The notes under the pieces were generated by a model that worked only from the letters and a program-made list of their open reading frames with translations, made no database searches and was not told the DNA's origin. This document shows, piece by piece, positions 1,398 through 64,000 of a stretch of DNA of 64,000 bases (positions within the stretch are counted from its first letter, which is position 1; every line of letters begins with the position of its first letter). The position numbers and the translations under genes were made by a program. Origin of the DNA: Macrostomum lignano (taxonomy: Eukaryota); the NCBI GenBank assembly GCA_002269645.1, contig NIVC01000037.1:1335121-1399120 (forward strand). Reading direction: 5' to 3'.

Positions 1398-2064
1398 CAT
1401 GGAGTAGATTGTGGGTTCCACAACAGCTCGGGTCATGGAGTAGATTGTGTGTTCCACAACAGCTCGGGTCAGGGAGTAGATTGTGTGTTCCACAACAGCT
1501 CGGGTCATGGAGTAGATTGTGTGTTCCACAACAGCTCGGGCCATGGAGTAGATTGTGTGTTCCACAACAGCTCGGGTCAGGGAGTAGATTGTGTGTTCCA
1601 CAACAACTCGGGTCAGGGAGTAGATTGTGGGTTCCACAACAGCTCGGGTCAGGGAGTAGATTGTGTGTTCCACAACAGCTCGGGTCATGGAGTAGATTGT
1701 GGGTTCCACAACAGCTCGGGTCTTGGAGTAGATTGTGGGTTCCACAACAGCTCGGGTCAGGGAGTAGATTGTGGGTTCCACAACAGCTCGGGTCAGGGAG
1801 TAGATTGTGGGTTCCACAACAGCTCGGGTCATGGAGTAGATTGTGTGTTCCACAACAGCTCGGGTCAGGGAGTAGATTGTGTGTTCCACAACAGCTCGGG
1901 CCATGGAGTAGATTGTGTGTTCCACAACAGCTCGGGCCATGGAGTAGATTGTGTGTTCCACAACAGCTCGGGTCAGGGAGTAGATTGTGGGTTCCACAAC
2001 AGCTCGGGCCATGGAGTAGATTGTGTGTTCCACAACAGCTCGGGTCATGGAGTAGATTGTCACT
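1398..2064. repeat. 36-bp minisatellite, ~18 copies, internal hairpin TTGTGG-GTT-CCACAA
   Basis: Unit CATGGAGTAGATTGTGGGTTCCACAACAGCTCGGGT, head-to-tail with no spacers; explains the HGVDCGFHNSSG ORFs. Confidence 0.95.
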
Positions 2065-2452
2065 AAGATATTAGAACAGAGAAAACTACCTTCAAATTCA
2101 TAGGTTTAATTGAAAATCTCATTATAAGATTAACGCATAGTAGCTATCAAATTGTAATCTCCGAGTTCAGCAAAGTAATATATCTGGCTTTGAAATCTTC
2201 AGAGTCGTGGATTATTCAAATGTAAAATATTTCATAACAGATTTTGGTGTTTTTATTGAACTTCACAATTATTTTCTGCTGATGTTTTTAAAACCATTTT
2301 TCATGTTTATTTCAGTATGCAATTTGATATTTAATTAAAGATTTAAAACGAACAAATTATGGAAAAACTTTAACCCGCAACAAATGGCAAGTGAGGAGGA
2401 CTTTCTCTTGGATTTCTTAGAATCCTTCATAGCAACAGGCCAGTTGCCAGGG

Positions 2453-2657
2453 TCAACATCTGCGACTTTGCCCGCCCCGCTGCTCTCGGTGCACATCGAA
2501 GCAGGCCAGGTTCTCCCCTGTCAGCGGGTTGCCCGGCACACCGTTTGGCGACGATGGAGGGCAGAGGCTGGAACGCTGCTTGCCGCCGAGGCTGAGGGTG
2601 AACTGCTGGCAGCCCTCGCCTGTCACCGGGTTGCAGCCACCTGGAATTGGAGACGCC

Positions 2658-2718
<61 letters not shown>

Positions 2719-2739
2719 GTCTGTCTGTCTGTCTGTCTC

Positions 2740-2828
<89 letters not shown>

Positions 2829-2871
2829 GTGTCTGTCTGTCTGTCTGTCTGTCTCTCTGTCTGTCTGTCTC

Positions 2872-2964
<93 letters not shown>

Positions 2965-2991
2965 GTGTCTGTCTGTCTGTCTGTCTGTCTC

Positions 2992-3024
<33 letters not shown>

Positions 3025-3025
3025 G

Positions 3026-3072
<47 letters not shown>

Positions 3073-3110
3073 CTGTCTGTGTGCCTGTCTGTCTGTCTGT
3101 CTACCTGTCC

Positions 3111-3160
<50 letters not shown>

Positions 3161-3245
3161 GTACCTGTCTGTCCGTCTGTCTGTCTGTCTGTCTGTCTGT
3201 GTACCTGTCTGTCCGTCTGTCTGTCTGTCTGTCTGTGTGTCTGTG

Positions 3246-3276
<31 letters not shown>

Positions 3277-3294
3277 GTGTCTGTCTGTCTGTCC

Positions 3295-3334
<40 letters not shown>

Positions 3335-6300
3335 GCCTGTCCGTCTGTCTGCCTGTGTGTCTGTGTGTCTGTGTGTCTGTGTGTCTGTCTGTCTGTGTGT
3401 CTGTCTGTGTGTCTGTCTGTCTGTCTGTCTCTCAGCCTAGCCTCCAATATTTAATTTTCCCGATAAGCAGCTCATCTTACCAATCGGTTGAGTCCGTCGG
3501 TGCTTCTCTTCAGCGCTAATCGCGAATCCCTGGCAGTTCTCCCCGGTCAGGGGATTTCTGACTGAATCTGCAGAGTCACAGTTGTGCCATTTTCAGAATT
3601 TCAGCTTTTACGCTGGCCATGCTGTAAATATGGAGACCCTCGAAAATCTCATATCCAGACTCTCCACTATCTAGTACCTCACGTAAAGACTCTAACCTAA
3701 ATTCTGTCACCAATTCTGTAAGATTCTCGTTCTAAAAACTTTCACTCTAGAGACTCCCATGCTGCAAAATGTCACTCTAGAGACTCCCATGCTGCAAAAT
3801 GTCACTCTGGAGACTCTCGGGCTGCAAAATGTCACTCTGGAGACTCTTGGGCTGCAAAATGTCACTCTAGAGACTCTCCATACTGCAAAATGTCACTCTA
3901 GAGACTCTCCATACCGCAAAATGTCACTCTAGAGACTCCCCATACCGCAAAATGTCACTCTAGAGACTCTCCATACTGCAAAATGTCACTCTAGTGACTC
4001 CCAGGCTGCAAAATGTCACTTTAGTGACTCCCAGGCTGCAAAATGCCACTCTAGAGACTCCCCATACTGCAAAATGTCACTCTAGAGACTCTTGGGCTGC
4101 AAAATGTCACTCTAGAGACTCTCCATACTGCAAAATGTCACTCTAGAGACTCTCCATACCGCAAAATGTCACTCTAGAGACTCCCCATACCGCAAAATGT
4201 CACTCTAGAGACTCTCCATACTGCAAAATGTCACTCTAGTGACTCCCAGGCTGCAAAATGTCACTTTAGTGACTCCCAGGCTGCAAAATGCCACTCTAGA
4301 GACTCTTGGGCTGCAAAATGTCACTCTAGAGACTCTCCATACCGCAAAATGTCACTCTAGAGACTCCCCATACCGCAAAATGTCACTCTAGAGACTCTTC
4401 ATACTGCAAAATGTCACTCTAGTGACTCTCAGGCTGCAAAATGTCACTCTAGTGACTCCCAGGCTGCAAAATGTCACTCTAGAGACTCTCCATACTGCAA
4501 AATGTCACTCTAGTGACTCCCAGGCTGCAAAATGTCACTTTAGTGACTCCCAGGCTGCAAAATGCCACTCTAGAGACTCTTGGGCTGCAAAATGTCACTC
4601 TGGAGACTCTCACCACTTGAAATGACGGCGGGTTGTCTCTCCCGAAATTCGGCGCAGTTATAGCTGTAAGTTGCGCAGTTTGCCCCTGTCACCGGGTTGG
4701 TCGCAACAACCCGCCGGTCGGAACTGGTGCCCACACTGGGGTCACTGGTGACGCAATTCTCACCTGTCAGCGGATTTCCACCTAGTTTTTTGGCAAAAAG
4801 CATTGTTTTATTATTGTTGCAATAATTCTAGACACGCTACTTTACGAGCGTAAGTAGTCTATAAAGCGCATTTTTTCATTCACCGGAAACACGTTTATTG
4901 CCAGATTTATATCGCCACTCGTTGAGCTTCTCAGAAATTGAGTAGCTGCTGCAGTTCTTTCCGGTCAGCGGGTTCGAAGCGGCATCTACAGTGTATGCGT
5001 GTTAATCGAAAATTAGTTGACGGTAACAGTACACTTGTATCCTGAATCTGCCATGTACATGTATTTTTCGAAAAACTTGTGCCCCAAAATCCAAAATCCA
5101 AAATCCCAAATCCTGAATCCCAAACCCTAAATCCCAAATCCTAAATCGCAAATCCTGAATCCCAAATCCTGAATCCCAAATCCTGAATCCTAAATTCTCA
5201 ATCCCAAATCCAAAATCCCAAATCCTTAATTCCAAATAATGAATCCCAGATACTGACTCTCAAATCCTAACCCTAAATCCCAAACCCTAAATCCAAAATC
5301 CTGAATTTCAAATCCCAAATCCTGAATCCCAAATCCTGAATCCCAAATCCCAAATCCTAAATCCCAAATCCTGAATCCCAAATCCTGAATCCTGAATCCC
5401 AAATCCTGAATCCTGAATCCCAAATCCAAATCCTAAATCCCAAATCCTAAATCCCAAATCCTGAATCCCAAATCCTAAATCCCAAATCCTTAATCCCTAA
5501 TTCAAGGTCGGACCACCTGGTTAAAAAGACTACCACAACGTACCGCTCTCTGTCCGCCTCCCAGAGTTTGTTGTCTTCATCTCGTGATTGATTTCATAGC
5601 TGGAAACTCCGTCTCCGGTCAGCGGGTTGGCCCTGCTGTGTTGCCGCTCTGAGGGTCAGCCGCCAGTTGTATTTGACTCATGAAATCGACTCGCGTCTTC
5701 GATCGTGTTTCTCGTGACTTTTATTTATTGTACATTTTGTGTATTGATCAATCTCAACCCCTCACCATTCACCCGCTGAATATTTATTGTCAGAAAATTT
5801 AAATTCGCGCCAAGGCAAGGTCAGAGGGCGAAATCAGGCAATCGCAACCCGATTCATCAACCAAACCCCAAACTCTCAGCCAATCGCAACCCTCATCAAC
5901 CGAACCCCAAACTCTCTCAGCCAATCGCAACCCCTCATCAACCGATCCCCAAATTCTCAACCAATCGCAACCAAATTTATCACCCAAACCCCAAACTCTC
6001 AGCCAATGGCAACCCTTCACCAACCAAACTGCAAACTATCAGCCAATTGCAACCCTTCATCAACCAAACCCCAAACTCTCTCAGCCAATCGCAACCCTTC
6101 ACGAACAAAACCCTCAGCCAATCGCAACCCAATTCAACAACCAAACCCCAAAGTCCCAACAAATCGCAATCCTTCATCAACCAAACCCAAAACTCTCAGC
6201 CAATCGCAACCCCTCATTAACCGAACTCCAAACTCTATGCCAATCGCAACCCCTCATTGTAGTGCTCATGCGAGCCCAATTTATATGTACATCGGCCTTG

Positions 6301-9300
6301 CGTACAATTCATGCACTTCAAGTGCGGCGATTCTCCACCCCCCACTCTGGTGGCGTGATTTTATTCCATAGTCTGAAAATAAATAAATATCGATCAGCCC
6401 ACCTAGCAGGGCTTCACCTTTCGTCTCAGCACACTCCGGCTCTTCTTACTATAGCCATTACACTTATCAACCAGACCTAAACTCCCAGCCAATCGCAACC
6501 CCTCCAATCTCACCATTGGTCAGCGGCCTCTGCCTGTCAGCATATCCGTATATCGGATCCCACTCAACTCCAAAATCGCCACTCCCAGATATGATGTCTC
6601 TATGAGCTGAAATGGGAAATTAGTTGCTGCGCAAATTTGTTCTTTTTCGTTTTTTTCTCTGCACCTGCCCAACCCCGTCCCCCTGAAAACACACCTTGTT
6701 GGATCCGTGTCTTCCCAGGCCGCCCGTTGGGCCGCAGATCTTCGGGATAATCCGCAGAGCCGCCACTCAGATTCAGCGGGCTGTCAGCTGCGAGTCGGAG
6801 AGGGTGGATAAAATTATGGGTTTCACTGGCCCATTCTCAATGCTCTTGAATTTATGGGAACTCTAAGTAGAGATTTTAGATACTTTTTTGAGTAGCTCTC
6901 TTGGGAAACCGCAAATGGGATCTTCGGTAACCAACAGATGGCATCTTCGGTAAGCAACAGATGGCATCTTCGGTAAGCAACAGATGGGATCTTTTGAAAC
7001 TACAGATGGAATCTTTGGAAACAACAGATGGGATCTGCGGAAGCTACAGATCGAATCTGCGGGAACTACAGATGGGATCTTTGGAAACAACAGATGGGAT
7101 CTGCGGAAGCTACAGATAGAATCTGCGGAAACTACATATGGGATCTTTGGAAACCACAGATGGGATCTGCGGAAGCTACAGATAGAATCTGCGGGAACTA
7201 CAGATGGAGTCTTCGGAAACCGCAAACGGGATCTTTGGAAACCACAGATGGGATCTTCGGTAACCAACAGATGGGATCTATGGAAACTACAGATGGGATC
7301 TTCGGTAACCAACAGATGGGATCTTTGGAAACTACAGATTGGATCTGCGGAAGCTACAGATAGAATCTGCGGAAACTACAGATGGGATCTTTGGAAACCA
7401 CAGATGGGATCTTGGAATCCCCAAATTTGGGAACCGGCAAAATGACCCCTCGCCTGACTCACAGTCCTTCCTTTTCGAATCCACCCGAGAGAACAGCTTC
7501 ACCTCGGCTCCAAGATTTCCCTCTCCCAGAATAGGATTCCGATCGTCTGCAAGTTGAAGAAATGTTTGGTTACCTCTTTCAGTTGACAATTGGAAATTTT
7601 AGGTTGAAGCATTCAAAATTTTAGCAGATGAAGCCATAAGAGCTTGGGCAATCAAAAACACCCTTGCCTCATACTACTAAGTAAGTAGCTTAAATGTTTT
7701 ACTTTGAATTTCTTTCAAAAGTAGACAGGGGGCTAGCAGGGGACAACAGGGGGCTAGCAGGGGACAACAGGGGGCTAGCAGGGGACAACAGGGAGCTAGC
7801 AAGGGACAACAGGGGGCTAGCAGGGGACAGGGGGGCTAGCATGGGACAACAGGGAGCTAGCAAGGGACAGAGGGCTAACAGGGGACAGGGGGCTAGCAAG
7901 GGACAGGAAGCTAGCAGGGACAACAACAGAGGGCTAGCAAGGGACAACAGGGGGCTAGCAAGGGACAACAGAGGGCTAGCGGTGGACAGGGGGGGCTAGC
8001 AGGGGACAGGGGGGCTAGCAGGGGACAACAGGGGGCTAGCAGGGGACAACAGGGGGCTAGCAGGGGACAGGGGGGGGCTAGCAGGGGACAGGGGGGGGGC
8101 TAGCAGGGGACAGGGTGGGCTAGCAGGGGACAGGGGCTAGCGGTGGACAGGGGGCTAGCAGGGGACAGGGGGCTAGCAGGGGACAGGGGCTAGCAGGGAA
8201 CAGGGGGCTAGCAGGGGACAGGGGGCTAGCAGGGGACAGGGGGCTAGCAGGGAACAGGGGGCTAGCAGGGGACAACAGGGGGCTAGCAGGGGACAGGGGG
8301 CTAGCAGGGAACAGGGGCTAGCAGGGGACAACAGGGGGCTAGCAGGGGACAGGGGGGCTAGCAGGGACAGGGGGGGGGGCTAGCAGGGGACAGGGGGGCT
8401 AGCAGGGGACAGGGGCTAGCGGGGACAGGGGGCTAGCAGGGGACAGGGGGCTAGCAGGGGACAGGGGCTAGCAGGGAACAGGGGGCTAGCAGGGGACAAC
8501 AGGGGGCTAGCAGGGGACAGGGGGCTAGCAGGGAACAGGGGGCTAGCAGGGGACAACAGGGGGCTAGCAGGGGACAGGGGGCTAGCAGGGAACAGGGGCT
8601 AGCAGGGGACAACAGGGGGCTAGCAGGGGACAGGGGGCTAGCAGGGAACAGGGGCTAGCAGGGGACAACAGGGGGCTAGCAGGGGACAGGGGGCTAGCAG
8701 GGACAGGGGCTAGCAGGGGACAACAGGGGGCTAGCAGGGGACAACAGGGGGCTAGCAGGGGACAGGGGGCTAGCAGGGGACAGGGGGCTAGCAGGGGACA
8801 ACAGGGGCTAGCAGGGGACAGGGGGCTAGCAGGGGACGGGGGCTAGCAGGGGACAACAGGGGCTAGCAGGGGACAAGGGGCTAGCAGGGGACAACAGGGG
8901 GCTAGCAGGGGACAGGGGGCTAGCGGGGACAGGGGCTAGCAGGGGACAGGGGGCTAGCAGGGGACAGGGGCTAGCAGGGGACAGGGGGGCTAGCAGGGGA
9001 CAGGGGGCTAGCAGGGGACAGGGGGCTAGCAGGGGACAACAGTGGGCTAGCAGGGGACAGGAGGGGGGCAATGAGTAGAAAATAAAAAGCAAGGAAACGA
9101 GTCAGTCAGTTGAAGAAAACATTGAAACTACATAAAACTGCAGTGTCGCAGAAGTGAGAATTTCTCTCAGCATATTTTATTGTATTATCGCCCGCGCGCT
9201 CACCCCGCTCTCGAGTGGCCCTTTTTGTCCGCTCCTGCTGATAGCCAAGTGTCAAACCGTTTTCCTCAGAAGGAGTCGCTGTCGCTTTCTTGTTGGTTAG

Positions 9301-9579
9301 GCCGGTGATGGGATTCCGATCCTGATCGATGGCTGCAGAGTTTAACGAGTAAAGGAATTAAAGAGAACTCTTGCTAATAAATATGAAAATGGGGGAAAGA
9401 CACATCCACATTGTAAATGCATATTTAATCTTTAATATTTAGCTTTCGTCAAAAGTTAGTCCAGTTTTAGTATATATTAGAGCTGCATAAGTAATATTAA
9501 TTACTATATGAAGCGGCTGTTTCTTATAATTAAACGCAATAAAAGACAAATGATTTAATTTACCTCGAGATCGGTTCAT
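2453..9579 (-). CDS. 10-exon gene encoding a ~354-aa NP[LIV]TG-repeat protein (putative microtubule-associated, Jupiter-like motif)
   Basis: Exons (minus): 9579-9564, 9332-9204, 7546-7463, 6787-6695, 6606-6514, 5648-5544, 4985-4884, 4781-4614, 3567-3481, 2640-2453. All introns GT-AG and phase 1; 1065 nt splices into one open frame: [16 protein letters not shown]...RNPILGEG...ANPLTGDG...SNPLTGKNC...GNPLTGENC...TNPVTGANC...RNPLTGENC...CNPVTGEGC...GNPLTGENL...RRC*. The function call is inference. Confidence 0.8.
2657..3432. repeat. (TCTG)n microsatellite in last intron of the NPxTG gene
   Basis: Direct reading; source of the SVCL/DRQT ORFs. Confidence 0.97.
3742..4610. repeat. 30-31-bp minisatellite (AGAGACTCCCATGCTGCAAAATGTCACTCT), ~28 copies, intronic
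   Basis: Direct reading; on the minus strand it starts immediately after the donor at 4613. Confidence 0.93.
5085..5495. repeat. 7-bp degenerate satellite (AAATCCC/GAATCCC/AAATCCT)
   Basis: Direct reading; intron between NPxTG exons 5648-5544 and 4985-4884. Confidence 0.9.
5830..6260. repeat. Degenerate ~45-50-bp array containing CAGCCAATCGCAACC
   Basis: Recurrent CCAATCGCAACC core followed by CATCAACC and AAACCCCAAACTCT; one extra copy at ~6485. Confidence 0.85.
6915..7412. repeat. 21-23-bp minisatellite (GGAAACTACAGATGGGATCT..)
   Basis: Direct reading; intronic. Confidence 0.9.
7729..9066. repeat. G-rich 18-22-bp minisatellite (GGGGGCTAGCAGGGGACA[ACA])
   Basis: Direct reading; two G-runs per unit (G-quadruplex potential) and a GCTAGC palindrome in each unit. 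Confidence 0.95.
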
Positions 9580-10345
9580 TTTCAATATCAGCGCGATGAT
9601 GGTTGTAAATGAAAAATTTACGAAGTATAGAACTTTTATACTGTATGGGGTCTTTTACAATTCTCTAAAACTGACACCTAGTAGTCTAGAAATTCTTATT
9701 TTATAGAGTTGAACCTCTAGCTCGTATATAAAGTATACACTTGGAAATAGTTCGTTTTTTTACAAAAATGTGCCGCTCTCTCGATTAATATTGGCTCACA
9801 ATTGGTTAGAGGTGAGAAAGGAGAAGTGTGAAAAAAAGCCTCATGCGGAGCACAGGGGGGGGGGGCGGCAGCAGTTGGAAAACTTTAACAGTGTGGCTTT
9901 GAGAGTGAGCTTCGCGGGAAACAGCTGGAGAGCAGGCTCTTACATGTACATGCGGTAATAGTGGTCTAGTGAAGGTACATGTTAGTTGGAGGAAGTGGAG
10001 ACTGCATGGGGAAACAACTAAATTATATGAGCTGCTACAGGCTTGGTATAATTGCTAGCTGCAATCGTGTCATTGAGTATAGTGAGTATAAAACTTTGAG
10101 CTCAGCTTTTCAGAATGTATATGTACATGTAAATACGCGCATGTAATACATGCAGATTTTGCTTTAAGAATTAAACATATTTATATGGCATGTTGAGTGC
10201 ATTTTCTTCCTAAAATTTTAAATTAATACACAGATTTTAGATTGTGTACATAAGTTCGTTCGGACATGTACATATATTTAGCCGCCTATTTTTAGTTCGA
10301 CAGCATTAATAACCTCAGATGCTTTTACGTACATCAAATCACCGG

Positions 10346-10405: not shown

Positions 10406-12140
10406 GAATACGCGTTCAGCGTCACAGGGCGCGCTTCAAAGCCAGGTCGCGAATGAATGCCACGCCGCCGGCCGAATCCGGGGCGCCGGCGTCAGCCAGC
10501 AGGCAGTCGACGAAACGCCGAGTGCGCGTCTGCCCCCGCCGGTAGGGTGCCTGCAGCGTTAGCAGCAGCACCTCCTGCACCGGCTGTGGGCAGTACGACT
10601 CGGCGCGGATGATGTGGCCTGCCAGCTGGAGTCGCCGACGGCGCAACAGGTCGCTTGGACGGACCAGGCCGGCGCGGCGATATAAAGCCGCGCTGGTCAC
10701 TCGCTCGTAGCCGATCCTGAAGGCGGCGCGCAGCAGGCCAGCATGCGCCGCGTCAACTTGTTGTTCGAGCGACTCCGTCAGCGTCCAGGTCTCGACGTTG
10801 TACAGCAGGTCGGTCTCGATTACCGCCTGGAACAACGCTGCCTTCTGGCGGTCAGGTACCTGCAGGACTGCAGGACTGCCCTCACAGAACGAAAGGCAGC
10901 CCAGGCAAGCCCGCGGCGAAGCCGCAAATCCTCGCGGACGCCGGGAACCAGACTGCCGAGGTAGACGAACTGCTGACAACGCGGAAACTGTGTCGCCTGT
11001 CCATCAGCACCTCGACACAAAATCGCAGCCTTGATGTCGTCCGGCACGCAGAGCACGACGGTCCTCTGCGTGTTGACCACCAGGCCGACACTCGCCGCAA
11101 CAGCAACTAGCTTGTCCAGTTGTCGCTGGGCGCCATCGACAGTTGAGGACAGCAGGGCGGGGTCGTCGGCGTAGCCAAGCAGGCTGAGCCGACTCTCCGG
11201 TTGACGTCGACCCACGCGTCGCCGCAACAGAAAGCCGTCGTCGTTGGTAGGAAGAGTGGTCCGCAGCACCCAGTCAAGCATCAGAACGAACAGGAACGGC
11301 GCAGGCGTATCTTCTTGAAGCACTCCGGAGGATGTCTCAAAGAAGTCCGATAGGCCGTCCGGTGTTGAAACAGCAGCTTTCGGATCACGGTACATCGCCA
11401 TGATGGCAGAAATCAGCTACTCTGGCACGTTGTACGCACGGAGCATCTTTGGGAGCACAGATCTGGCGACCGAGTCGAATGCCTTGTTGAAATCTATGAA
11501 GATAACAATCAGGATCGACTGGCGTATCCGTACTTCCTCAATTACTCGCCGAAGAGCCAGGATCTGCGTCACTGTGCCGCGATGGGGCCGGAAGCCGTTC
11601 TGCTCAGGACGCAGGTACTGATTCAGCACGGGCTGCAACCACGATAGCAGAATCCGGTTGAATAACTTCGCAGCGCAGGACTGAAGGCAGATACCTCGAT
11701 GCTCCTCAAGCCTCGTGGTGCTCGGCTTCTTAGGAACTGCGACGATATGTGCGCCGTGATCCATTTGTTGGGTGCCTCCTCACCGAAGAGTACGCGATTC
11801 ATCACTCTGGCGACCTCACTGGCCACATAGTGGATGCACAGCGCCTCAATGGGCACCTCGTCCGGATTCAGCGCTTTCCCGCCCGGTGACTGTTGGGCGA
11901 GCCTCTCACAACGTTGGGTGTGCTGACTGGTACTAGGCTGAAGCTCTCTTCTGCCGGCAACGGCACCTCCGGCGACAGCGTCAGACTGTCTGGCAGCGGA
12001 TGTGGCGGCGTGTTGACAATGGCGGCGAAGAACTCACGCAGCTCGTTCCTGCGTTCGTCCGCGGTGTCGCCTGTCAGGTTTAGCGGAAAGCTTTCGCCCC
12101 GTCAAAGCATTGATAGCCGACCAGGCCACGCGGCTCTTAC
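10406..12140 (-). mobile_element. 5'-truncated, decayed RTE-like non-LTR retrotransposon (RT plus C-terminal region)
   Basis: Pieces in ORFs 11417..11764, 10820..11401, 10422..10979: VAVPKKP, EQNGFRPHRGT, FIDFNKAFDSV, SSGVLQEDT, LGYADD, YNVETWTL. Stop near 11417 and several frameshifts. Homology extends 5' to VRAAW..AINALTGRK at ~12140. Confidence 0.93.
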
Positions 12141-22773: not shown

Positions 22774-25700
22774 ATGCGGCCGCTTCTGCTGCCGCTGCTA
22801 CTATCGCTACTGCTGCTGCCTGTCCGGCCGACTGACGCCGCCGCCACACCGGCCACCTGTCAGTCCGTGTCGGCCGTTTACGCAGCCAAGAATCTGGACG
22901 TACTGCAGGTGCGATACCAGGCCTCGGGCAGTCACCTGGCCGTCTGTCCGGCCCGGCCGGGTCCCTCCTGTTGCAGTCGGGAGATGGAAACTGCTCTAGA
23001 GAATCGGGCCAAGACTGACATGTACCAGGATCTGTACCAGCATCTGGTGCCTCAGAGCACCTCGTTGGCCTCTCTGCTGACTAGCTTTCAGTCTCTGGCC
23101 CTACAGATGGTTAACAATTCCTACACGAGACTGGACACAAGTTTCAAGAGCATCTACGGCTACTCTTATATTGAGAATAAGCAGCCGTTTCTGCAATTCT
23201 TCGAAGGCTTGCGAGCCTACTTGTCCGGCGGACCGGATACTGTGGCCGGAGTTGCCAAGGCCCTGTTCGAAAGCATCTCCTCTCGGGTGTACGTACTAGT
23301 CATGACCAACTATGACATTGATGAGGCCTATCTGACCTGCGTCCGCAGCCGCCTGGACCAGCTAAAGCCTTTAGGCAACATGCCCGAGCGTATTAGCCAA
23401 GAACTTATCCGGGCATTCGTGCCCGCTCGCCGATTCCTGGCCGGGTTGGCCGCGCTGCAGGACGCCGTTCAGATGTCCCCGGCCACTCCGCTGCCCGCTC
23501 AGTGCCAGAAATCGCAGTTGCGCTCTCGATATTGCGCCTGGTGCGACGGGATTACAAATCTGCAGCCGTGCTTTGAGCTGTGCTCAGCCTCTATGGCCGA
23601 CTGTCTCACCCAGTTGGACTCGCTGGCCGAACCATTCGACCAGCTTTTGGACGAGTTGGTCAAGCTGTCCAATAAGATCCGGGGTCCAAATAACCTCTAC
23701 CAGGTAATGGGTTGCTGTAGGCTATCTAGACTTACGGTTCTGCAACGGGGTGTTGTATTGAGTCAATTGTATTGAGTTTCTATGGTGTATTAAGATTCTG
23801 GATTGTCAAGATTCTAGGGTGTGAAGATTCTTGGGTGTGAAGATTCTTGGTTGTGAAGATTCTGGGTTGTGAAGATTCTTGGGTGTGAAGATTCTGGGTT
23901 GTAAAGATTCTTGGGTGTGAAGATTCTAGGTTATGAAGATTCTGGGTTGTGAGGATTCTAGGTTGTGAAGATTCTTGGGTGTGAAGATTCTTGGGTGTGA
24001 ATATTCTGGGTTGTGAAGATTCTGGGTTATGAAGATTCTTTGGCGTGAAGATTCTGGGGTTGTGAAGATTCTGAGTTAGGAAGATTGTAGGTTGTGAAGA
24101 TTCTGAGTTAGAAAGATTGTAGGTTGTGATGATTCTGGGTTGTGAAGATTCAAGATTGTGAAGATCCTGGGTTGTGAAGATTCTGGGTTGTGAGGATTCT
24201 AGGTTGTGAAGATTCTGGGTTGTGAAGATTCTAGGCTGTGAAGATTCTGGGTTCTGAAGTTTCTTAGGTGTGAAGATTCTGGGTTGTGAAGACCTTGGGG
24301 TGTGAAGATTCTGAGTTAGGAAGATTGTAGGTCGTGAAGATTGTGGGTTGTAAAGATTCTTAGTTGTGGAGGAGATTCAGGGTGTGAAAATTCTGGGGTG
24401 TAAAAAATATAATGTAAAGATTGCGGAGGTTTCAGCCGCTTATTTATATAAGCTTCGCGGACACAGTCGTCAACTTTAAAATTTGATTATTTTTTGTCCA
24501 AAAACCAACGCGCAGGTGCTGGAAAACCTGGGCCTGCGCATCAGCGCCGGCATCATGGACATGCAGGAGCGCAAGGACCACATCCAGACTGAGGTGGCCA
24601 AACTGTGCGGCCCGCCCAAGCTTAAAGCCAATGGCTCGCCTTCCATCGTGCCGCCGCCGCTGCCTCGGCCCGGCCGAGGTCGCCGACGTCGCCGCCGCGC
24701 CTCCATGTTCGGCTGGAACTACCGCAACAGCGATGATGCGCCAGGGCCCAGCAGCCAAGCCCAGGAGCGGCTGGACGAGCTGGCCCTCACCGCTAAGCGA
24801 AGCCTGCCCGCCAGCCGGAGCCTGTTCAGGCCCAGCAGCCTGGCCAAGCGCTTTTGCAAGGCCGACCCGGCCCCGCCTGGACGCTGCTGGAACGGCACCG
24901 ACTCCGCCGCTGGCTACACGGCGCCAGCGTCGACGGTAGCGTCGCCAGTAGAGCCGCCTACACTGGCCGTGTCTCAGCGGGTGGCCAATCTGCGCGCCGC
25001 TCACCGGCTTCTAGCCGAGCTGCCTAAAAGCGAAAGCTTTGCCGGCTTCGTCGAGCAGCCGCTGGATCCAACGCTTAGGGGCCTGCTTAATAAACGCGCC
25101 AGAGTGGCGTCTAGCATTGGCAGTTCCGGCCCCAGCCTGACAGACGCTTTGCCTATCGGCGCCGCTACTGGTGGCGCCGGCCTCGGTTCCGGCAGCGGCG
25201 CCGCTCCTCCGCCCGTGCCGGTGGCCCCTCGGCCTCGCCCACCCGCCGGCGGATTTCCGCGCCGGCTTTCAACTCTGCCTCCGCTGACCCGGCCGCCGCC
25301 TGCTGGCGTAGTTGATTCTTGGCGTCCGTTGCCGCCAATTCGGCCGCGCCCAGACACGGCCGGGTCCGGCGATGCCGCCGGTCCGCCGCCAAGGCCAGGG
25401 GTCTGGGTACCCCCGCCTGCAGCCACCCGGGAGCCACCGGCGCCGCCTGCAACCCGCTGGCCACCGCTGCCGCCTGCGACCCGCTGGCCACCGCTGCCGC
25501 CTGCGACCCGTTGGCCACCGCTGCCGCCTGCGACCCGTTGGCCACCGCTGCCGCCCCCGCAGCCGCCCGTTGTTGACGGAAGCTCCACAGTTGCTCCGCT
25601 GCCTTGGCGGCCGCCACCCGTTAACCCAGGCCTCGGCTCCGGCGACGAAGAGCGGCCGCCACCCCGTCCGGGGATGTTCGTCCCGGCTCTGCCCACCGCC

Positions 25701-26270
25701 AGCTCTTCCTCTTCATCCACATCCGGCCCACTCGTGCCCGGCGGCGTCTCTTCGGGCGACGGCGAGCCAACCGGGCCTCCGCCGCCGCCTCGGCCGGTTC
25801 CGTCCGGCTGGCCGTGGCCGCCTATCGTCGACGTCGGCGGCGGCGAGACCTCCGGCGACGGTGAATTGCCGCCCCCAGTGGCGCCGCCTCAGCCACCGTC
25901 ACCGCCAACCGAGTCCTGGTGGACGCCCCGGCCGCCGGTACAGCCGCAGCCGCCCCGGAAGCCGGCCACCCGCTGGCCGCCGCAGCCGCCCCGCCAGCCG
26001 CCCCGCCAGCCGCCCACCCGCTGGCCGCCGGTCATCCCCGGCCCGCCGCCCGGCGGTGACCTGTGGCTGCCCAAAGAGCCGGACGATCAAGGCGGAGCGG
26101 AGCGCGGCCGCGGCGAAGGCTCCATCCACGGCCCGATGAAGATGACCAGCGCCAAGCGGGCCTGCCCGCCAGGCTCCCCGGCCTGTCCGGCCTGCCGCCC
26201 GCTGGCCGCCTCGGCCGGGACTCTCCTGCTGCTGGCCGGTCTGCAGCGGCTGCTTATGCTGCTGCGCTGA
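22774..26270 (+). CDS. Glypican (GPI-anchored heparan sulfate proteoglycan), 2 exons, ~894 aa
   Basis: Exon 1 22774-23703 (CAG|GTAATG), exon 2 24516-26270 (CGCAG|GTG), phase 0. Signal peptide MRPLLLPLLLSLLLL; 14 Cys in glypican spacing (TC, VC, SCCSREME, TCV, QC, YCAWC, PCFELC..DC, LCG, FC, RCWNG); ISAGIMDMQE motif; Ser-Gly sites; hydrophobic C-terminus. Confidence 0.93.
23790..24400. repeat. 16-17-bp minisatellite (GTGAAGATTCTGGGTT) in glypican intron
   Basis: Direct reading. Confidence 0.92.
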
Positions 26271-29915: not shown

Positions 29916-30545
29916 AAAGGATAGTACGCTCGTAGCTTCGCTATGAAAGCCAATCGATAGGCTTTCTTAGGCTGGGGTTCTTGCTTGGCGAATTCCTGCC
30001 AAAATGGCATGCACGCACTACTCGTATAAACTGCGTGGTACGAGTGTATATGCTGGTTAAGTCTCCCAGAGAGGCAACAAGAATCGGAAAGAAGTTTCTT
30101 TTCACAGCAGTATCGTCAGTTGATCCGCCTAGAGATACTTGTGCGGCCGGCTTAGCCGTTATTGCATTGGGGGGATAAGTGCAGCCGTGTTGCATGGTAA
30201 TGGCATTTCTCTTCAGTGCAGACTGGTCGCGCATTCCTGATACTCTCTATCCGGCTGGATTCTCTCCCCCCAATTCCTCTGATCCTCCAGTCTCCCTCCA
30301 CAGGAATCTGCATCTGCACTCAAGGCACGCCAGTTTCCTCTCCTTATTAATTCTTGAATTCTTTCCTCGCAGCTCCTTGGGATTGGAACAAGCCCAAGAC
30401 AAGCAAAGGCGGGCCGGTATTCGTGGCAAACTTGGCAACCATTTTTTTGGCGCTCTAAGCCTCTAAAACATCATTGGTGTTCATTTTGGCGAAATGTCTT
30501 CAAGTCCTAAATGCGTTCCTGCGATTCGGATATCCTATTCGGCTT

Positions 30546-31012
30546 TCCTGACACCCATATCAGCCCTACTGACACCCATGTCATCCCCACTGACACCCAT
30601 GTCATCCCCACTGACACCCATGTCAGCCCTACTGACACCCATATCAGCCCTACTGACACCCATATCAGCCCCACTGACACCCATGTCAGCCCTACTGACA
30701 CCCATGTCAACCCTACTGACACCCACGTCATCCCTACTGACACCCACGTCATCCCTACTGACACCCATGTCAGCCCCACTGACACCCATGTCAACCCTAC
30801 TGACACCCACGTCATCCCTACTGACACCCACGTCATCCCTACTGACACCCACGTCATCCCTACTGACACCCACGTCATCCCTACTGACACCCATGTCAGC
30901 CCCACTGACACCCATGTCAACCCTACTGACACCCACGTCATCCCTACTGACACCCACGTCATCCCTACTGACACCCATGTCAGCCCTACTGACACCCATG
31001 TCATCCCTACTG
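30546..31012. repeat. 21-bp minisatellite (CCCTACTGACACCCATGTCAG)
   Basis: Direct reading; source of the PTDTHV ORFs. Confidence 0.93.
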
Positions 31013-31464
31013 TAAAGGGTTTGGCGTTCCTGATTTATTATTTAGGCGCGGCTTTCATTTTTACATTTTTGTTTTACATGAGTTTTCACATTGCAGTGCA
31101 GCAATAGATTAATGCCTGAGGATGGAGTCCAAAGAATCGACAATTTATTTATCGAAATTCTTCAAATAGGAACCATTCGGCGATTGATACGAGTGTAAAC
31201 GCTTATTTATTTCCAATATTTCCAATTCCACTCTTATAGAGACTGGGTCTCCCATATCTTTATCGACGGCTATACAATTGCTACGAGTATTGGAATTTGA
31301 TTTTCGCAGCTCAGCCTCATTCACTCGAAGATTTTCCCCATGGTTTTCATCTGTCCAACGAGGGTTGATAAGGATAGTGCAGCAGACACAATATTGCGTT
31401 TAGCCTCCTCTTCAATATGAGTAGAAAAACCCTTAAACTTCAGTGGAATACTGCCCTTTTATCA

Positions 31465-35269: not shown

Positions 35270-47984
<12,715 letters not shown>

Positions 47985-48954: not shown

Positions 48955-64000
<15,046 letters not shown>

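What the first reader, a model, noticed from the sequence alone, without database searches (positions are those of the whole stretch)
2453..9579. Hidden exon-per-repeat gene: ~11 NP[LIV]TG modules in symmetric phase-1 exons
Seen: short unique islands between satellites each translate to an NP(L/I/V)TG(E)N(C)..Y/F motif or a variant (NPILG, DIISG, DPIYG, SPLNLSG). Every island has an AG..GT boundary in phase 1 and all internal exon lengths are multiples of 3 (129, 84, 93, 93, 105, 102, 168, 87). A Kozak-like aaaATG exon at 9579-9564 completes a 354-aa frame. Motif spacing of ~28-35 aa in a low-complexity, apparently disordered protein is typical of microtubule-lattice-binding repeat proteins (MAPs, ciliary MIPs). 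I recall a single GNPVTGEG motif in Drosophila Jupiter; a protein built almost entirely of it would be unusual. Symmetric exons would allow repeat number to be tuned by skipping. Function is inference.
Basis: partly seen in the sequence, partly recalled or inferred. Interest (0 to 1): 0.8.

Follow-up and report, generated by a model that had tools for sequence, protein, structure and literature searches.

The report
Flatworm Jupiter-like microtubule-repeat protein gene
The islands between the satellites form a real 10-exon gene for a disordered protein of about 12 NP(L/I/V)TG modules, from an unstudied flatworm and ribbon-worm family that looks like a repeat-expanded relative of the microtubule protein Jupiter; microtubule binding is inferred, not shown.

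Summary
Ten minus-strand exons (9579-2453) have canonical AG/GT sites. All eight internal exons are phase 1 and multiples of 3, and they give a 354-aa ORF. NP[LIV]TG occurs 8 times, only here in the window (0.13 expected). The gene is real: homologues at 26-43% identity exist in Macrostomum, cestodes, trematodes and nemerteans. The Macrostomum and Echinococcus genes share the one-module-per-exon, phase-1 layout. No Pfam or PDB match exists, source names such as "surface protein PspC" are unsupported, and AF2 predicts disorder.

The Jupiter link is real but is carried by the repeat module alone. Pfam JUPITER does not hit the family, and hhalign of family against Jupiter fails. A beetle protein with four RNPVTG repeats bridges them: it matches the flatworm profile at E=1.6e-9 and passes the JUPITER threshold. 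Its repeats are also 87-nt phase-1 exons. Drosophila Jupiter carries RNPITGLG and GNPVTGEGY.

Two published precedents suggest a mechanism. JPT2's PPGG repeats are needed for its microtubule localisation. The GYNPITGEY loops of the ciliary inner protein CFAP213 plug β-tubulin's taxane pocket. My best reading is a multivalent microtubule binder, possibly luminal. Nemertean isoforms drop single modules in frame. Function is untested.

The parts
9564..9579 (-). Exon 1: ATG plus 5 codons (MNRSR), then G|gt, a phase-1 donor.
   Evidence: There is an A at -3. 'NR' lines up with the KNR that ends the corresponding exon in M. lignano and E. multilocularis. This is the least secure exon.
9204..9332 (-). 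Exon 2, 129 nt, phase 1/1. Module 1 reads DRNPITGL.
   Evidence: It aligns to RDPI[AT]GLG of the homologues. RNPITGL is identical to the motif in the long isoform of Drosophila Jupiter.
7463..7546 (-). Exon 3, 84 nt, phase 1/1. Module reads [15 protein letters not shown].
   Evidence: tblastn with M. lignano P0001 gives 74% identity. The intron position matches M. lignano.
6695..6787 (-). Exon 4, 93 nt, phase 1/1. Variant module SPLNLSG...LRPNGRPGK.
   Evidence: It aligns to RNPIALTG..LR.T.RPR of the homologues.
6514..6606 (-). Exon 5, 93 nt, phase 1/1. Reads [21 protein letters not shown], the best-conserved block of the family.
   Evidence: tblastn gives E=3e-7 to 6e-7 against the M. lignano proteins and 3e-4 against trematode and cestode proteins. 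The window has I where the family has a nearly invariant P (RDPISG).
5544..5648 (-). Exon 6, 105 nt, phase 1/1. Module reads [14 protein letters not shown].
   Evidence: It aligns to RNPVTGEGVSSWDC of the beetle JUPITER-domain protein.
4884..4985 (-). Exon 7, 102 nt, phase 1/1. Module reads [14 protein letters not shown].
4614..4781 (-). Exon 8, 168 nt, phase 1/1. Double module: GNPLTGENC plus [14 protein letters not shown].
   Evidence: The same two-module exon exists in M. lignano and E. multilocularis.
3481..3567 (-). Exon 9, 87 nt, phase 1/1. Module reads [14 protein letters not shown].
   Evidence: Its size, phase and motif offset match the 87-nt repeat exons of the beetle gene L004.
2453..2640 (-). 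Exon 10, 188 nt including the TGA. Double module: [12 protein letters not shown] plus [14 protein letters not shown].
   Evidence: There is a matching two-module exon in M. lignano and E. multilocularis. Those genes continue into further C-terminal exons, which the window gene lacks.
9633..9640 (-). TATAAAAG, a putative TATA box 61 nt upstream of the ATG. This is an inference.
   Evidence: Read directly. No functional test was done.
2306..2311 (-). AATAAA, a putative poly(A) signal about 145 nt after the stop codon. This is an inference.
   Evidence: Read directly.
2657..9067 (.). Six intronic satellites, one kind per intron: (CTGT)n at 2657-3430; 30-bp unit at 3742-4611; 7/14-bp unit at 5087-5501; 40/82-bp unit at 5834-6257; 22-bp unit at 6899-7417; 18-bp unit at 7724-9067.
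   Evidence: They are non-coding filler and are not specific to this gene, because 40% of the whole window is tandem repeat.

Best explanation
Gene and protein. This is an intact protein-coding gene that is absent from the protein collections searched. It encodes a 354-aa, mildly basic (pI 8.8) protein rich in G, S, R, N and T and predicted to be disordered. The protein has no signal peptide recognisable by eye (no predictor was run). It is a string of about 12 modules of 26-40 aa. The consensus core, taken from 115 units across the family, is N-P-[LIV]-T-G-E-N-(C)-x-[ST]-[YF]-x-[VI]-x-x-E-E-[RK].

Family. The protein belongs to a family so far seen only in Platyhelminthes and Nemertea. Its repeat module, and the phase-1 intron just upstream of that module, are shared with the microtubule-associated protein Jupiter (Pfam PF17054). 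The family is therefore best read as a divergent, repeat-expanded branch of the Jupiter/JPT group.

Inferred mechanism. The protein binds microtubules multivalently, with each NPxTG turn docking on one tubulin subunit. The most specific version is that each turn plugs the luminal taxane pocket of beta-tubulin. Cryo-EM shows this for the GYNPITGEY loops of the inner protein CFAP213, and it has been proposed for the PPGG repeats of JPT2. About 30 residues of extended chain (roughly 10 nm) could reach the next beta-tubulin along a protofilament (8 nm) or on the neighbouring one (about 5 nm).

Splicing. Every module sits in a symmetric phase-1 exon, so exon skipping changes the number of binding modules without breaking the frame.

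Shown versus inferred. Shown: the gene structure, the family, the conserved exon layout, predicted disorder, the motif-level link to Jupiter, and module-wise isoforms in a relative. Inferred: microtubule binding, the binding site, and splicing in this species.
For: Gene and family:
- One search gives the gene model and the motif enrichment (8 observed, 0.13 expected).
- One search found 28 homologues, with E down to 3.5e-73, in Macrostomum, cestodes, trematodes and Tubulanus. One search shows the alignment running across the predicted junctions.
- Searches show that the M. lignano and E. multilocularis genes have the same one-module-per-exon, phase-1 layout, including both double-module exons.
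- AF2 gives mean pLDDT 42 and pTM 0.15.

Link to Jupiter:
- real Drosophila Jupiter carries SRNPITGLGLNGDG and EGNPVTGEGYK.
- Beetle protein P0059 (four RNPVTGxGVSSWDCK repeats) is hit by the flatworm-family profile at E=1.6e-9 among 1.84 billion proteins.
- P0059 passes Pfam JUPITER at 31.9 bits against a cut-off of 27.
- hhalign of the family against P0059 gives 95% probability. hhalign of Jupiter against P0059 gives 85%, with two units in register.
- BLASTP of the window protein against P0059 gives E=8e-8 (E-value for that single pairwise comparison), with three successive repeats in register.
- P0059 repeats are 87-nt phase-1 exons, like window exon 9. D. sechellia Jupiter has a phase-1 intron two codons upstream of NPVTG.
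- Unit HMMs built from the flatworm family score the Jupiter motifs at 9-16 bits, against a maximum of 7.6 in 3000 shuffles.

Mechanistic precedents:
- PMC12773733: JPT2's imperfect PPGG(K*S) repeats are required for microtubule localisation, and LNPPGGKSSISFY localises to microtubules. The authors propose the luminal taxane site as the binding site.
- That peptide shares a register with this module: N1, P2, G5 and an aromatic at position 11, which is present in 86% of 115 family units.
- bioRxiv 10.1101/2024.12.02.626492: two GYNPITGEY loops of CFAP213 sit in the taxane pockets of beta-tubulin on protofilaments 12 and 13.

Splicing:
- the Lineus isoforms differ by in-frame blocks of 30, 32, 39, 63 and 102 aa, each holding one to three modules.
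Against: - The window protein and every flatworm or nemertean member tested fail Pfam JUPITER, even at E<=10.
- hhalign of the family against Jupiter gives only 20%. BLASTP of Lineus against Jupiter shows only motif-level matches at E about 0.04.
- The whole chain to Jupiter rests on one short repeated motif, which could be convergent.
- The window protein has no PPGG motif, and PPGG is the element actually shown to matter in JPT2. Only the Lineus homologue has one, and it scores 7.4 bits against a shuffle maximum of 7.1.
- In the papers read here, nobody has tested whether Jupiter's NPVTG or NPITG motifs bind microtubules.
- JPT2's pocket contact is an AlphaFold3 model. Its luminal location rests on proximity labelling, super-resolution imaging and paclitaxel interference.
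- CFAP213 is a helical protein of protists with no detected metazoan homologues, so its similarity to this family is six residues.
- No expression or localisation data were found for any family member.
- The window gene lacks the family's conserved N-terminal exon and the C-terminal YNI[IL]TG exon. It also has I in place of a nearly invariant P. It may therefore be a divergent copy.
Confidence: 0.55

Rival explanations
1. The protein binds microtubules as a classical outer-surface lattice MAP of the tau/MAP2/MAP4 type. Each ~30-aa module would contact successive tubulin subunits along a protofilament ridge, not the lumen.
For: The modules are 26-40 aa, the protein is basic and disordered, and each repeat has its own exon. 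From my own knowledge, this resembles the 31-32-aa tau repeats, including a 93-nt alternatively spliced repeat exon. Drosophila Jupiter colocalises with cytoplasmic microtubules when expressed in HeLa cells.
Against: Pfam gives no match to a tau/MAP repeat. The only structural precedent for an NPITGE motif is luminal. The JPT2 study also argues for a luminal location.
Confidence: 0.2
2. The protein is a disordered multivalent scaffold unrelated to microtubules. It might drive phase separation, bind a small ligand as reported for JPT2 with NAADP, or carry a short linear motif for another partner.
For: The protein is predicted to be fully disordered. A 2026 preprint listed reports phase separation of JPT2 in NAADP signalling. 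The PPGG motif that is needed for JPT2's microtubule localisation is absent here.
Against: The strict spacing and the conserved N-P-x-T-G...aromatic register across about 12 modules and across phyla fit a periodic polymer partner better than a soluble ligand.
Confidence: 0.18
3. The gene is a decaying or non-functional copy, or a chance set of ORFs among the satellites.
For: The conserved N-terminal and C-terminal exons of the family are missing. There is a P-to-I change at a nearly invariant site. No protein more than 43% identical is in the databases.
Against: All 10 exons are open, and all 18 splice sites are canonical and in phase. Motif enrichment is about 60-fold over shuffles. Intron positions match distant homologues. 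There are TATA-like and AATAAA signals.
Confidence: 0.04
4. The protein is a secreted or surface cysteine-repeat protein, as the database name 'surface protein PspC' suggests.
For: The name is given by sources for several trematode and cestode members. Many modules contain a Cys.
Against: No member shows a signal peptide or hydrophobic N-terminus by eye, and no predictor was run. The Cys is present in only 46% of units and is replaced by V, L or A. Pfam finds no PspC-related domain. The names given to family members are mutually inconsistent (MBD, SH2, Ig-like, Shugoshin_C).
Confidence: 0.03

Closest known systems
Microtubule-associated protein Jupiter / JPT1 / JPT2 (Pfam PF17054)
   Same: Both are small to mid-sized disordered proteins built from short G/P-centred motifs. 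Jupiter has RNPITGLG and GNPVTGEGY, and a phase-1 intron lies just upstream of the NPVTG motif. Its cassette exons are in phase 1: the short isoform joins ...SGSRS directly to EGNPVTG. A beetle JUPITER-domain protein with four NPVTG repeats bridges the two groups. The register N-P-x-x-G-x5-aromatic is shared with LNPPGGKSSISFY of JPT2.
   Different: There is no PPGG motif and no Jupiter N-terminal or C-terminal block. The JUPITER HMM and profile-profile comparison do not detect the family. The NPxTG module occurs about 12 times here, against 1-2 in Drosophila Jupiter. The family also has extra conserved blocks (RDPISGxGDFGxEWDPI) that were not seen in Jupiter.
Unnamed Platyhelminthes and Nemertea family (for example M. 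lignano BOX15_Mlig011212g1, E. multilocularis 'surface protein PspC', Lineus LOC135494118)
   Same: The homology is significant over 57-98% of the query. The order of module types is the same, and so are the intron positions and phases.
   Different: Identity is only 26-43%. The window protein is shorter, at 354 aa against about 400-470. It lacks the LPHVD-ETG-KNR N-terminal exon and the C-terminal tail ending in YNI[IL]TG or NPITG.
CFAP213/FAP213, an arc-shaped inner protein of the central-pair C2 microtubule (Tetrahymena, Chlamydomonas)
   Same: The core of its conserved loop motif GYNPITGEY is N-P-I-T-G-E, which is identical to the module core here. In CFAP213 this loop sits in the taxane pocket of beta-tubulin.
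   Different: CFAP213 is described as having long helices. It has two loops, not twelve. Its authors found homologues mainly in protists and none in higher eukaryotes. I had no CFAP213 sequence, so homology was not tested. The resemblance is six residues.
Tau/MAP2/MAP4 microtubule-binding repeats
   Same: There are tandem modules of about 31 aa in a disordered protein, with one repeat per exon and repeat number set by skipping a symmetric exon. This comparison rests on my own knowledge.
   Different: There is no sequence similarity and no Pfam match. The motif differs: PGGG there, NP[LIV]TG here.

Membership tests
Jupiter / JPT (Pfam PF17054) | A match to the JUPITER profile at or above the gathering score of 27 bits. 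| tested here: not met
   There was no JUPITER hit at E<=10 for the window protein or for 12 family members. As positive controls, Drosophila P0108 scored 618 bits and beetle P0059 scored 31.9 bits.
Jupiter / JPT (Pfam PF17054) | An N-terminal (V)LRPPGGGSSxxFG block and a C-terminal NRIPPGGxSSGLW block. These PPGG motifs are the elements required for JPT2's microtubule localisation. | tested here: not met
   A regex scan found no P[PG]GG in the window protein or in any flatworm member. Only the Lineus isoforms have RVLNPPGGRVSINLFGG. That motif scores 7.4 bits with a Jupiter N-terminal HMM, against a shuffle maximum of 7.1.
Jupiter / JPT (Pfam PF17054) | NP[IV]TG motif(s) in the C-terminal half. 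| tested here: met
   Jupiter has RNPITGLG and GNPVTGEGY, and the window protein has 8 strict copies. Flatworm unit HMMs score the Jupiter motifs at 9-16 bits, against a maximum of 7.6 in 3000 shuffles.
Jupiter / JPT (Pfam PF17054) | Detectable homology by profile methods, either direct or through an intermediate. | tested here: inconclusive
   Direct hhalign gives 20%. Through beetle P0059, the family profile gives E=1.6e-9, hhalign gives 95%, Jupiter against P0059 gives 85%, and P0059 passes Pfam JUPITER. All of these links rest on the same short repeat.
Jupiter / JPT (Pfam PF17054) | A shared gene architecture around the motif. | tested here: met
   A phase-1 intron lies 1-6 codons upstream of NP in the window gene, 4 codons upstream in the beetle gene with 87-nt exons, and 2 codons upstream in D. 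sechellia Jupiter.
Jupiter / JPT (Pfam PF17054) | Binding to microtubules. | not testable with these tools
   This needs co-sedimentation or localisation experiments. AlphaFold with tubulin could not be run here.
Platyhelminthes and Nemertea NPxTG-repeat family (unnamed) | Significant full-length sequence similarity. | tested here: met
   E=3.5e-73 to M. lignano P0001, at 40% identity over 95% of the query. There are 28 hits. One search gives the alignment.
Platyhelminthes and Nemertea NPxTG-repeat family (unnamed) | One module per phase-1 exon, with two conserved double-module exons. | tested here: met
   window; M. lignano; E. multilocularis.
Platyhelminthes and Nemertea NPxTG-repeat family (unnamed) | The conserved N-terminal LP(H/Y)(V/C)D-ETG-KNR block and the C-terminal tail motif. 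| tested here: not met
   They are absent from the model. tblastn did not find them anywhere in the window.
CFAP213 / FAP213 | The GYNPITGEY loop motif. | tested here: inconclusive
   The core NP[LIV]TGE is present in the consensus. The flanking Y residues are not conserved, although Jupiter has GNPVTGEGY.
CFAP213 / FAP213 | A helical arc-MIP fold, and sequence homology. | tested here: not met
   For the fold, the AF2 model of the closest homologue has almost no helix and a pLDDT of 42. Sequence homology could not be tested, because no CFAP213 sequence was on hand and PDB probes found nothing.
Tau/MAP2/MAP4 repeat family | A tubulin-binding repeat profile match. | tested here: not met
   Pfam gave no such hit.

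The most novel reading that the evidence does not exclude
The family is a metazoan luminal microtubule 'staple'. In this reading it is a disordered chain carrying 8-12 copies of the same NPxTGE loop that cryo-EM shows inside the taxane pocket of beta-tubulin in protist CFAP213. Each copy would plug one pocket, and the number of plugs would be set by skipping symmetric exons. NPxTG(E) and Jupiter/JPT's PPGG would then be two versions of one ancient taxane-pocket-binding motif. This would answer the question left open by the CFAP213 authors, who asked what plays that role in animals.
Probability: 0.3. Interest if true: 0.85.

Novelty: new variant of a known kind. Interest (0 to 1): 0.6.

Why it matters
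Endogenous ligands of the taxane pocket, and proteins that live inside singlet microtubules, are only now being found. If the mechanism holds, this family offers a natural multivalent array of a pocket-binding loop, with the number of loops tunable by splicing. It would link three things that have been treated separately: Jupiter/JPT PPGG repeats, the NPVTG motifs of Jupiter, and the GYNPITGEY loops of CFAP213.

The family occurs in parasitic flatworms (Schistosoma, Echinococcus, Fasciola, Clonorchis) and was not detected in vertebrates in the searches run here. It is therefore also a lineage-restricted cytoskeletal candidate worth localising. The family is testable in Macrostomum lignano, a flatworm in which (from my own knowledge) transgenesis is established.

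At the least, the work corrects misleading names such as 'surface protein PspC', 'SH2 domain-containing' and 'MBD domain-containing'. It also shows that the gene is missing from the protein collections searched for this genome.

Tried and rejected
- Pfam on the window protein and on family members gave only sub-threshold or motif-level hits (2C_adapt, TagH_SH3-like, DUF7043). I judge these to be chance matches to the 'NxITGENCxxY' string.
- PDB sequence searches found nothing relevant. I used the family profile, the Jupiter profile, the window protein and an artificial GYNPITGEY probe.
- Direct hhalign of the family against Jupiter gave 20%.
- The third homologue search, using the PPGG-bearing N-terminus of the Lineus protein, returned nothing. 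That motif's link to JPT therefore stays visual.
- The spliced protein itself could not be submitted to the exhaustive search or to AF2, because only contiguous window sequence is accepted. M. lignano P0001 and alignment A2 were used instead.
- Literature searches for 'surface protein PspC', Smp_055220 and the Mlig gene ids found one microarray listing. There, Smp_055220 is mildly higher in paired male schistosomes. I could not verify that this gene is the orthologue, so I do not use it.
- The supplements of the miracidium single-cell atlas held no hit.
- The Schistosoma locus L002 was too large to reach the script machine, so E. multilocularis was used for the exon map instead.
- Rfam found nothing in the window.
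- No search for upstream N-terminal or downstream C-terminal exons succeeded.
- The source organism was not identified. The best hits suggest a flatworm, with M. lignano the closest at 40-43% identity.

Full report
**Observation.** I read the minus strand of 2000-10200 and rebuilt the model by script. The ten exons are 9579-9564, 9332-9204, 7546-7463, 6787-6695, 6606-6514, 5648-5544, 4985-4884, 4781-4614, 3567-3481 and 2640-2453. Each is bounded by AG and GT. All nine introns are phase 1. The eight internal exons measure 129, 84, 93, 93, 105, 102, 168 and 87 nt, all multiples of three.

A six-frame scan of the whole window found 8 strict NP[LIV]TG motifs plus NPILG. All are on the minus strand, inside the gene and in exon order, with none elsewhere. 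200 shuffles gave a mean of 0.13 and a maximum of 2. Six of the nine introns each hold a different satellite. Tandem repeats cover 61% of the gene span and 40% of the window. The satellites are therefore a property of this genome, not of the gene.

A TATAAAAG lies 61 nt upstream of the ATG, and an AATAAA lies about 145 nt after the stop. Both are read from the sequence and untested.

**The gene is real.** The spliced protein finds 28 homologues. These include five Macrostomum lignano models (E=3.5e-73 for the best, 36-40% BLASTP identity), cestodes, trematodes and the nemertean Tubulanus. Nothing closer than about 40% identity was returned, so this gene's product is not in the collection searched.

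The alignment runs without breaks across the predicted junctions. I mapped M. lignano P0001 and Echinococcus multilocularis P0008 onto their own genomic loci. Both show the same design: one module per exon, phase-1 introns, and the same two double-module exons as window exons 8 and 10.

The window gene is shorter than its relatives. It lacks the conserved N-terminal block (LPHVD-ETG-KNR) and the C-terminal tail exon(s). tblastn finds neither anywhere in the window. It also has RDIISG where the family has a nearly invariant RDPISG.

**Family and distribution.** An exhaustive profile search of 1.84 billion representative proteins gave only 52 hits at E<=0.001. Those that carry names are flatworms (Macrostomum, monogenean, cestodes, trematodes), the nemertean Lineus, and one beetle. 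A few are evident chance matches: a bacterial protein, a mollusc Cys-repeat protein and an unnamed metagenomic protein (ENA).

Neodermatan flatworms also have a second, paralogous set with the motifs TDPITHS and RNPITGEGM and a long P/K-rich tail. No member has a genuine Pfam domain. The names given by sources are 'surface protein PspC' and SH2, MBD, Ig-like and Shugoshin_C 'domain-containing'. They are mutually inconsistent, and Pfam finds no such domain in the members scanned. No relative has a solved structure. AF2 on the closest homologue with the family alignment gives mean pLDDT 42 and pTM 0.15, which indicates disorder.

The window protein has pI 8.8 and is rich in G, S, R, N and T. No signal peptide is evident by eye; no predictor was run. 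Across 115 units the module consensus is N-P-[LIV]-T-G-E-N-C-x-[ST]-[YF]-x-[VI]-x-x-E-E-[RK]. An aromatic residue sits at position 11 in 86% of units. The Cys is present in only 46%.

**Relationship to Jupiter.** Real Drosophila Jupiter sequences contain EGNPVTGEGYK. The long isoforms also contain SRNPITGLGLNGDG, which matches RDPITGLGLLG in M. lignano and DRNPITGL in the window protein.

The standard membership tests fail:
- The Pfam JUPITER model does not hit the family.
- hhalign of the family against Jupiter gives 20%.
- BLASTP of Lineus against Jupiter shows only motif-sized matches.
- The PPGG motifs that define Jupiter/JPT are absent, except for one in Lineus (RVLNPPGGRVSINLFGG). That motif is statistically marginal.

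The link comes from a bridging protein, Dendroctonus ponderosae LOC109543605 (P0059, 169 aa). It has four RNPVTG[QE]GVSSWDCK repeats about 30 aa apart.
- The flatworm-family profile hits it at E=1.6e-9, database-wide.
- It passes the JUPITER gathering score, at 31.9 against 27 bits.
- It aligns to the family profile at 95% and to the Jupiter profile at 85%, with two units in register.
- It aligns to the window protein over three successive repeats, at E=8e-8 for the pairwise comparison.

Gene structure agrees. The beetle repeats are 87-nt phase-1 exons, the same size and phase as window exon 9. D. sechellia Jupiter has a phase-1 intron two codons before NPVTG. Unit HMMs built from the flatworm family score the Jupiter motifs at 9-16 bits, above every one of 3000 composition-matched shuffles (maximum 7.6).

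I conclude that the repeat module is probably homologous to Jupiter's NP[IV]TG units, and that the family is a repeat-expanded divergent branch. All of this evidence rests on one short module, so convergence is not excluded.

**How it most likely works (inference).** Two published results bear on the motif.

First, in human JPT2 the imperfect PPGG(K*S) repeats are required for microtubule localisation. The 13-residue peptide LNPPGGKSSISFY localises to microtubules. The authors place JPT2 in the lumen and model the motif in the beta-tubulin taxane pocket, with mutual interference with paclitaxel (PMC12773733). That peptide shares a register with the module here: N1, P2, G5 and an aromatic at position 11.

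Second, cryo-EM of the Tetrahymena ciliary-tip central pair shows the inner protein CFAP213. It inserts two conserved loops, motif GYNPITGEY, into the taxane pockets of beta-tubulin on protofilaments 12 and 13. The authors found no homologue in higher eukaryotes and asked what replaces it there (bioRxiv 10.1101/2024.12.02.626492). The core N-P-I-T-G-E is exactly the core of this family's module.

I therefore propose a multivalent microtubule binder in which each NPxTG turn docks on one tubulin, most specifically in the luminal taxane pocket. From general knowledge of the lattice, 26-40 residues of extended chain (about 10 nm) can reach the next beta-tubulin at 8 nm along a protofilament or about 5 nm sideways. 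No step of this was tested here.

**Module number and splicing.** Every module exon is symmetric in phase 1, so skipping any of them keeps the frame. In the nemertean Lineus, the 14 RefSeq isoforms of the homologue differ by in-frame blocks of 30, 32, 39, 63 and 102 aa. Each block holds one, two or three modules. The M. lignano models also differ by whole modules. Drosophila Jupiter's short isoform joins ...SGSRS directly to EGNPVTG across phase-1 exons.

**Rivals.**
- An outer-surface, tau-like lattice MAP fits the periodicity equally well. It differs only in the binding site.
- A scaffold unrelated to microtubules, acting through phase separation or ligand binding as reported for JPT2, cannot be excluded. 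The element proven necessary in JPT2 (PPGG) is missing here.
- A decaying copy is unlikely, given ten open exons and eighteen canonical in-phase splice sites.
- A secreted surface protein is unlikely: no signal peptide is evident by eye and the Cys is not conserved.

**Novelty.** The window gene is a new member, absent from the protein collections searched, of a family that sits in databases without characterisation. Seen as a kind, it is a new variant of the Jupiter/JPT type. In it the NPxTG unit, present once or twice in Jupiter, has become the whole protein. I found no paper describing this family, its link to Jupiter, or the coincidence with the CFAP213 pocket-binding motif.

Noticed in passing
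window 22774-26270 (+): A glypican gene. ORF 22774-23775 matches Pfam Glypican positions 2-304 (E=7e-60), and ORF 24483-26270 matches positions 301-425. The second ORF runs on into a very G+C-rich (64%) proline-rich repeat ('ATRWPPLPP'), which is unusual for a glypican C-terminus.
   Followed up: partly
window 38754-38960 (+) and 49834-50100 (+): Two exon-sized ORFs match the sodium:neurotransmitter symporter family (SNF/SLC6). The upstream ORF matches profile positions 204-250 and the downstream one matches 46-129. They therefore cannot belong to one gene in this order, and probably represent two tandem SLC6 genes.
   Followed up: partly
window 10422-11401 (-): A reverse-transcriptase fragment (RVT_1, 26 bits, below the cut-off) lies just upstream of the gene's putative promoter. 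It is probably a degraded LINE.
   Followed up: partly
whole window, for example 1387-2060, 30494-31107, 46134-47448, 51737-52994, 57713-59412, 61490-62749: About 40% of the 64 kb is tandem repeat of many different unit types. The long 'ORFs' listed in these stretches are repeat artefacts. A 36-bp satellite (1387-2060) starts about 250 nt after the gene's putative poly(A) signal.
   Followed up: partly
related proteins P0035, P0039, P0043, P0058 (Sparganum, Paragonimus, Heterobilharzia, a Logan assembly): Parasitic flatworms have a second paralogous family. It shares the N-terminal RDPI.G modules, but has TDPITHS and RNPITGEGM motifs and a long P/K/E-rich tail.
   Followed up: partly
database names of P0002, P0007, P0008, P0022, P0025: Source names of family members are inconsistent ('MBD', 'SH2', 'Ig-like', 'Shugoshin_C domain-containing', 'surface protein PspC'), and Pfam finds no such domain in the two of them scanned (P0007, P0008). 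The TagH_SH3-like hits at 27-29 bits on cestode members cover only 17-18 residues of the NxITGENCxxYDV string. They look like false positives at the gathering threshold.
   Followed up: partly
P0042 (M. lignano, 1906 aa, 'Reverse transcriptase domain-containing'): This protein matches the family profile only at residues 1384-1504. It is probably a chimeric gene model that fuses a retroelement with a family member.
   Followed up: no
L004 (Dendroctonus ponderosae, JAFETF010000011.1:2346348-2351404): This beetle gene has four 87-nt phase-1 NPVTG exons and an N-terminal 'FQRLFGP' resembling Jupiter's 'SRLFGEP'. It may be an unrecognised multi-repeat form of Jupiter in insects.
   Followed up: partly
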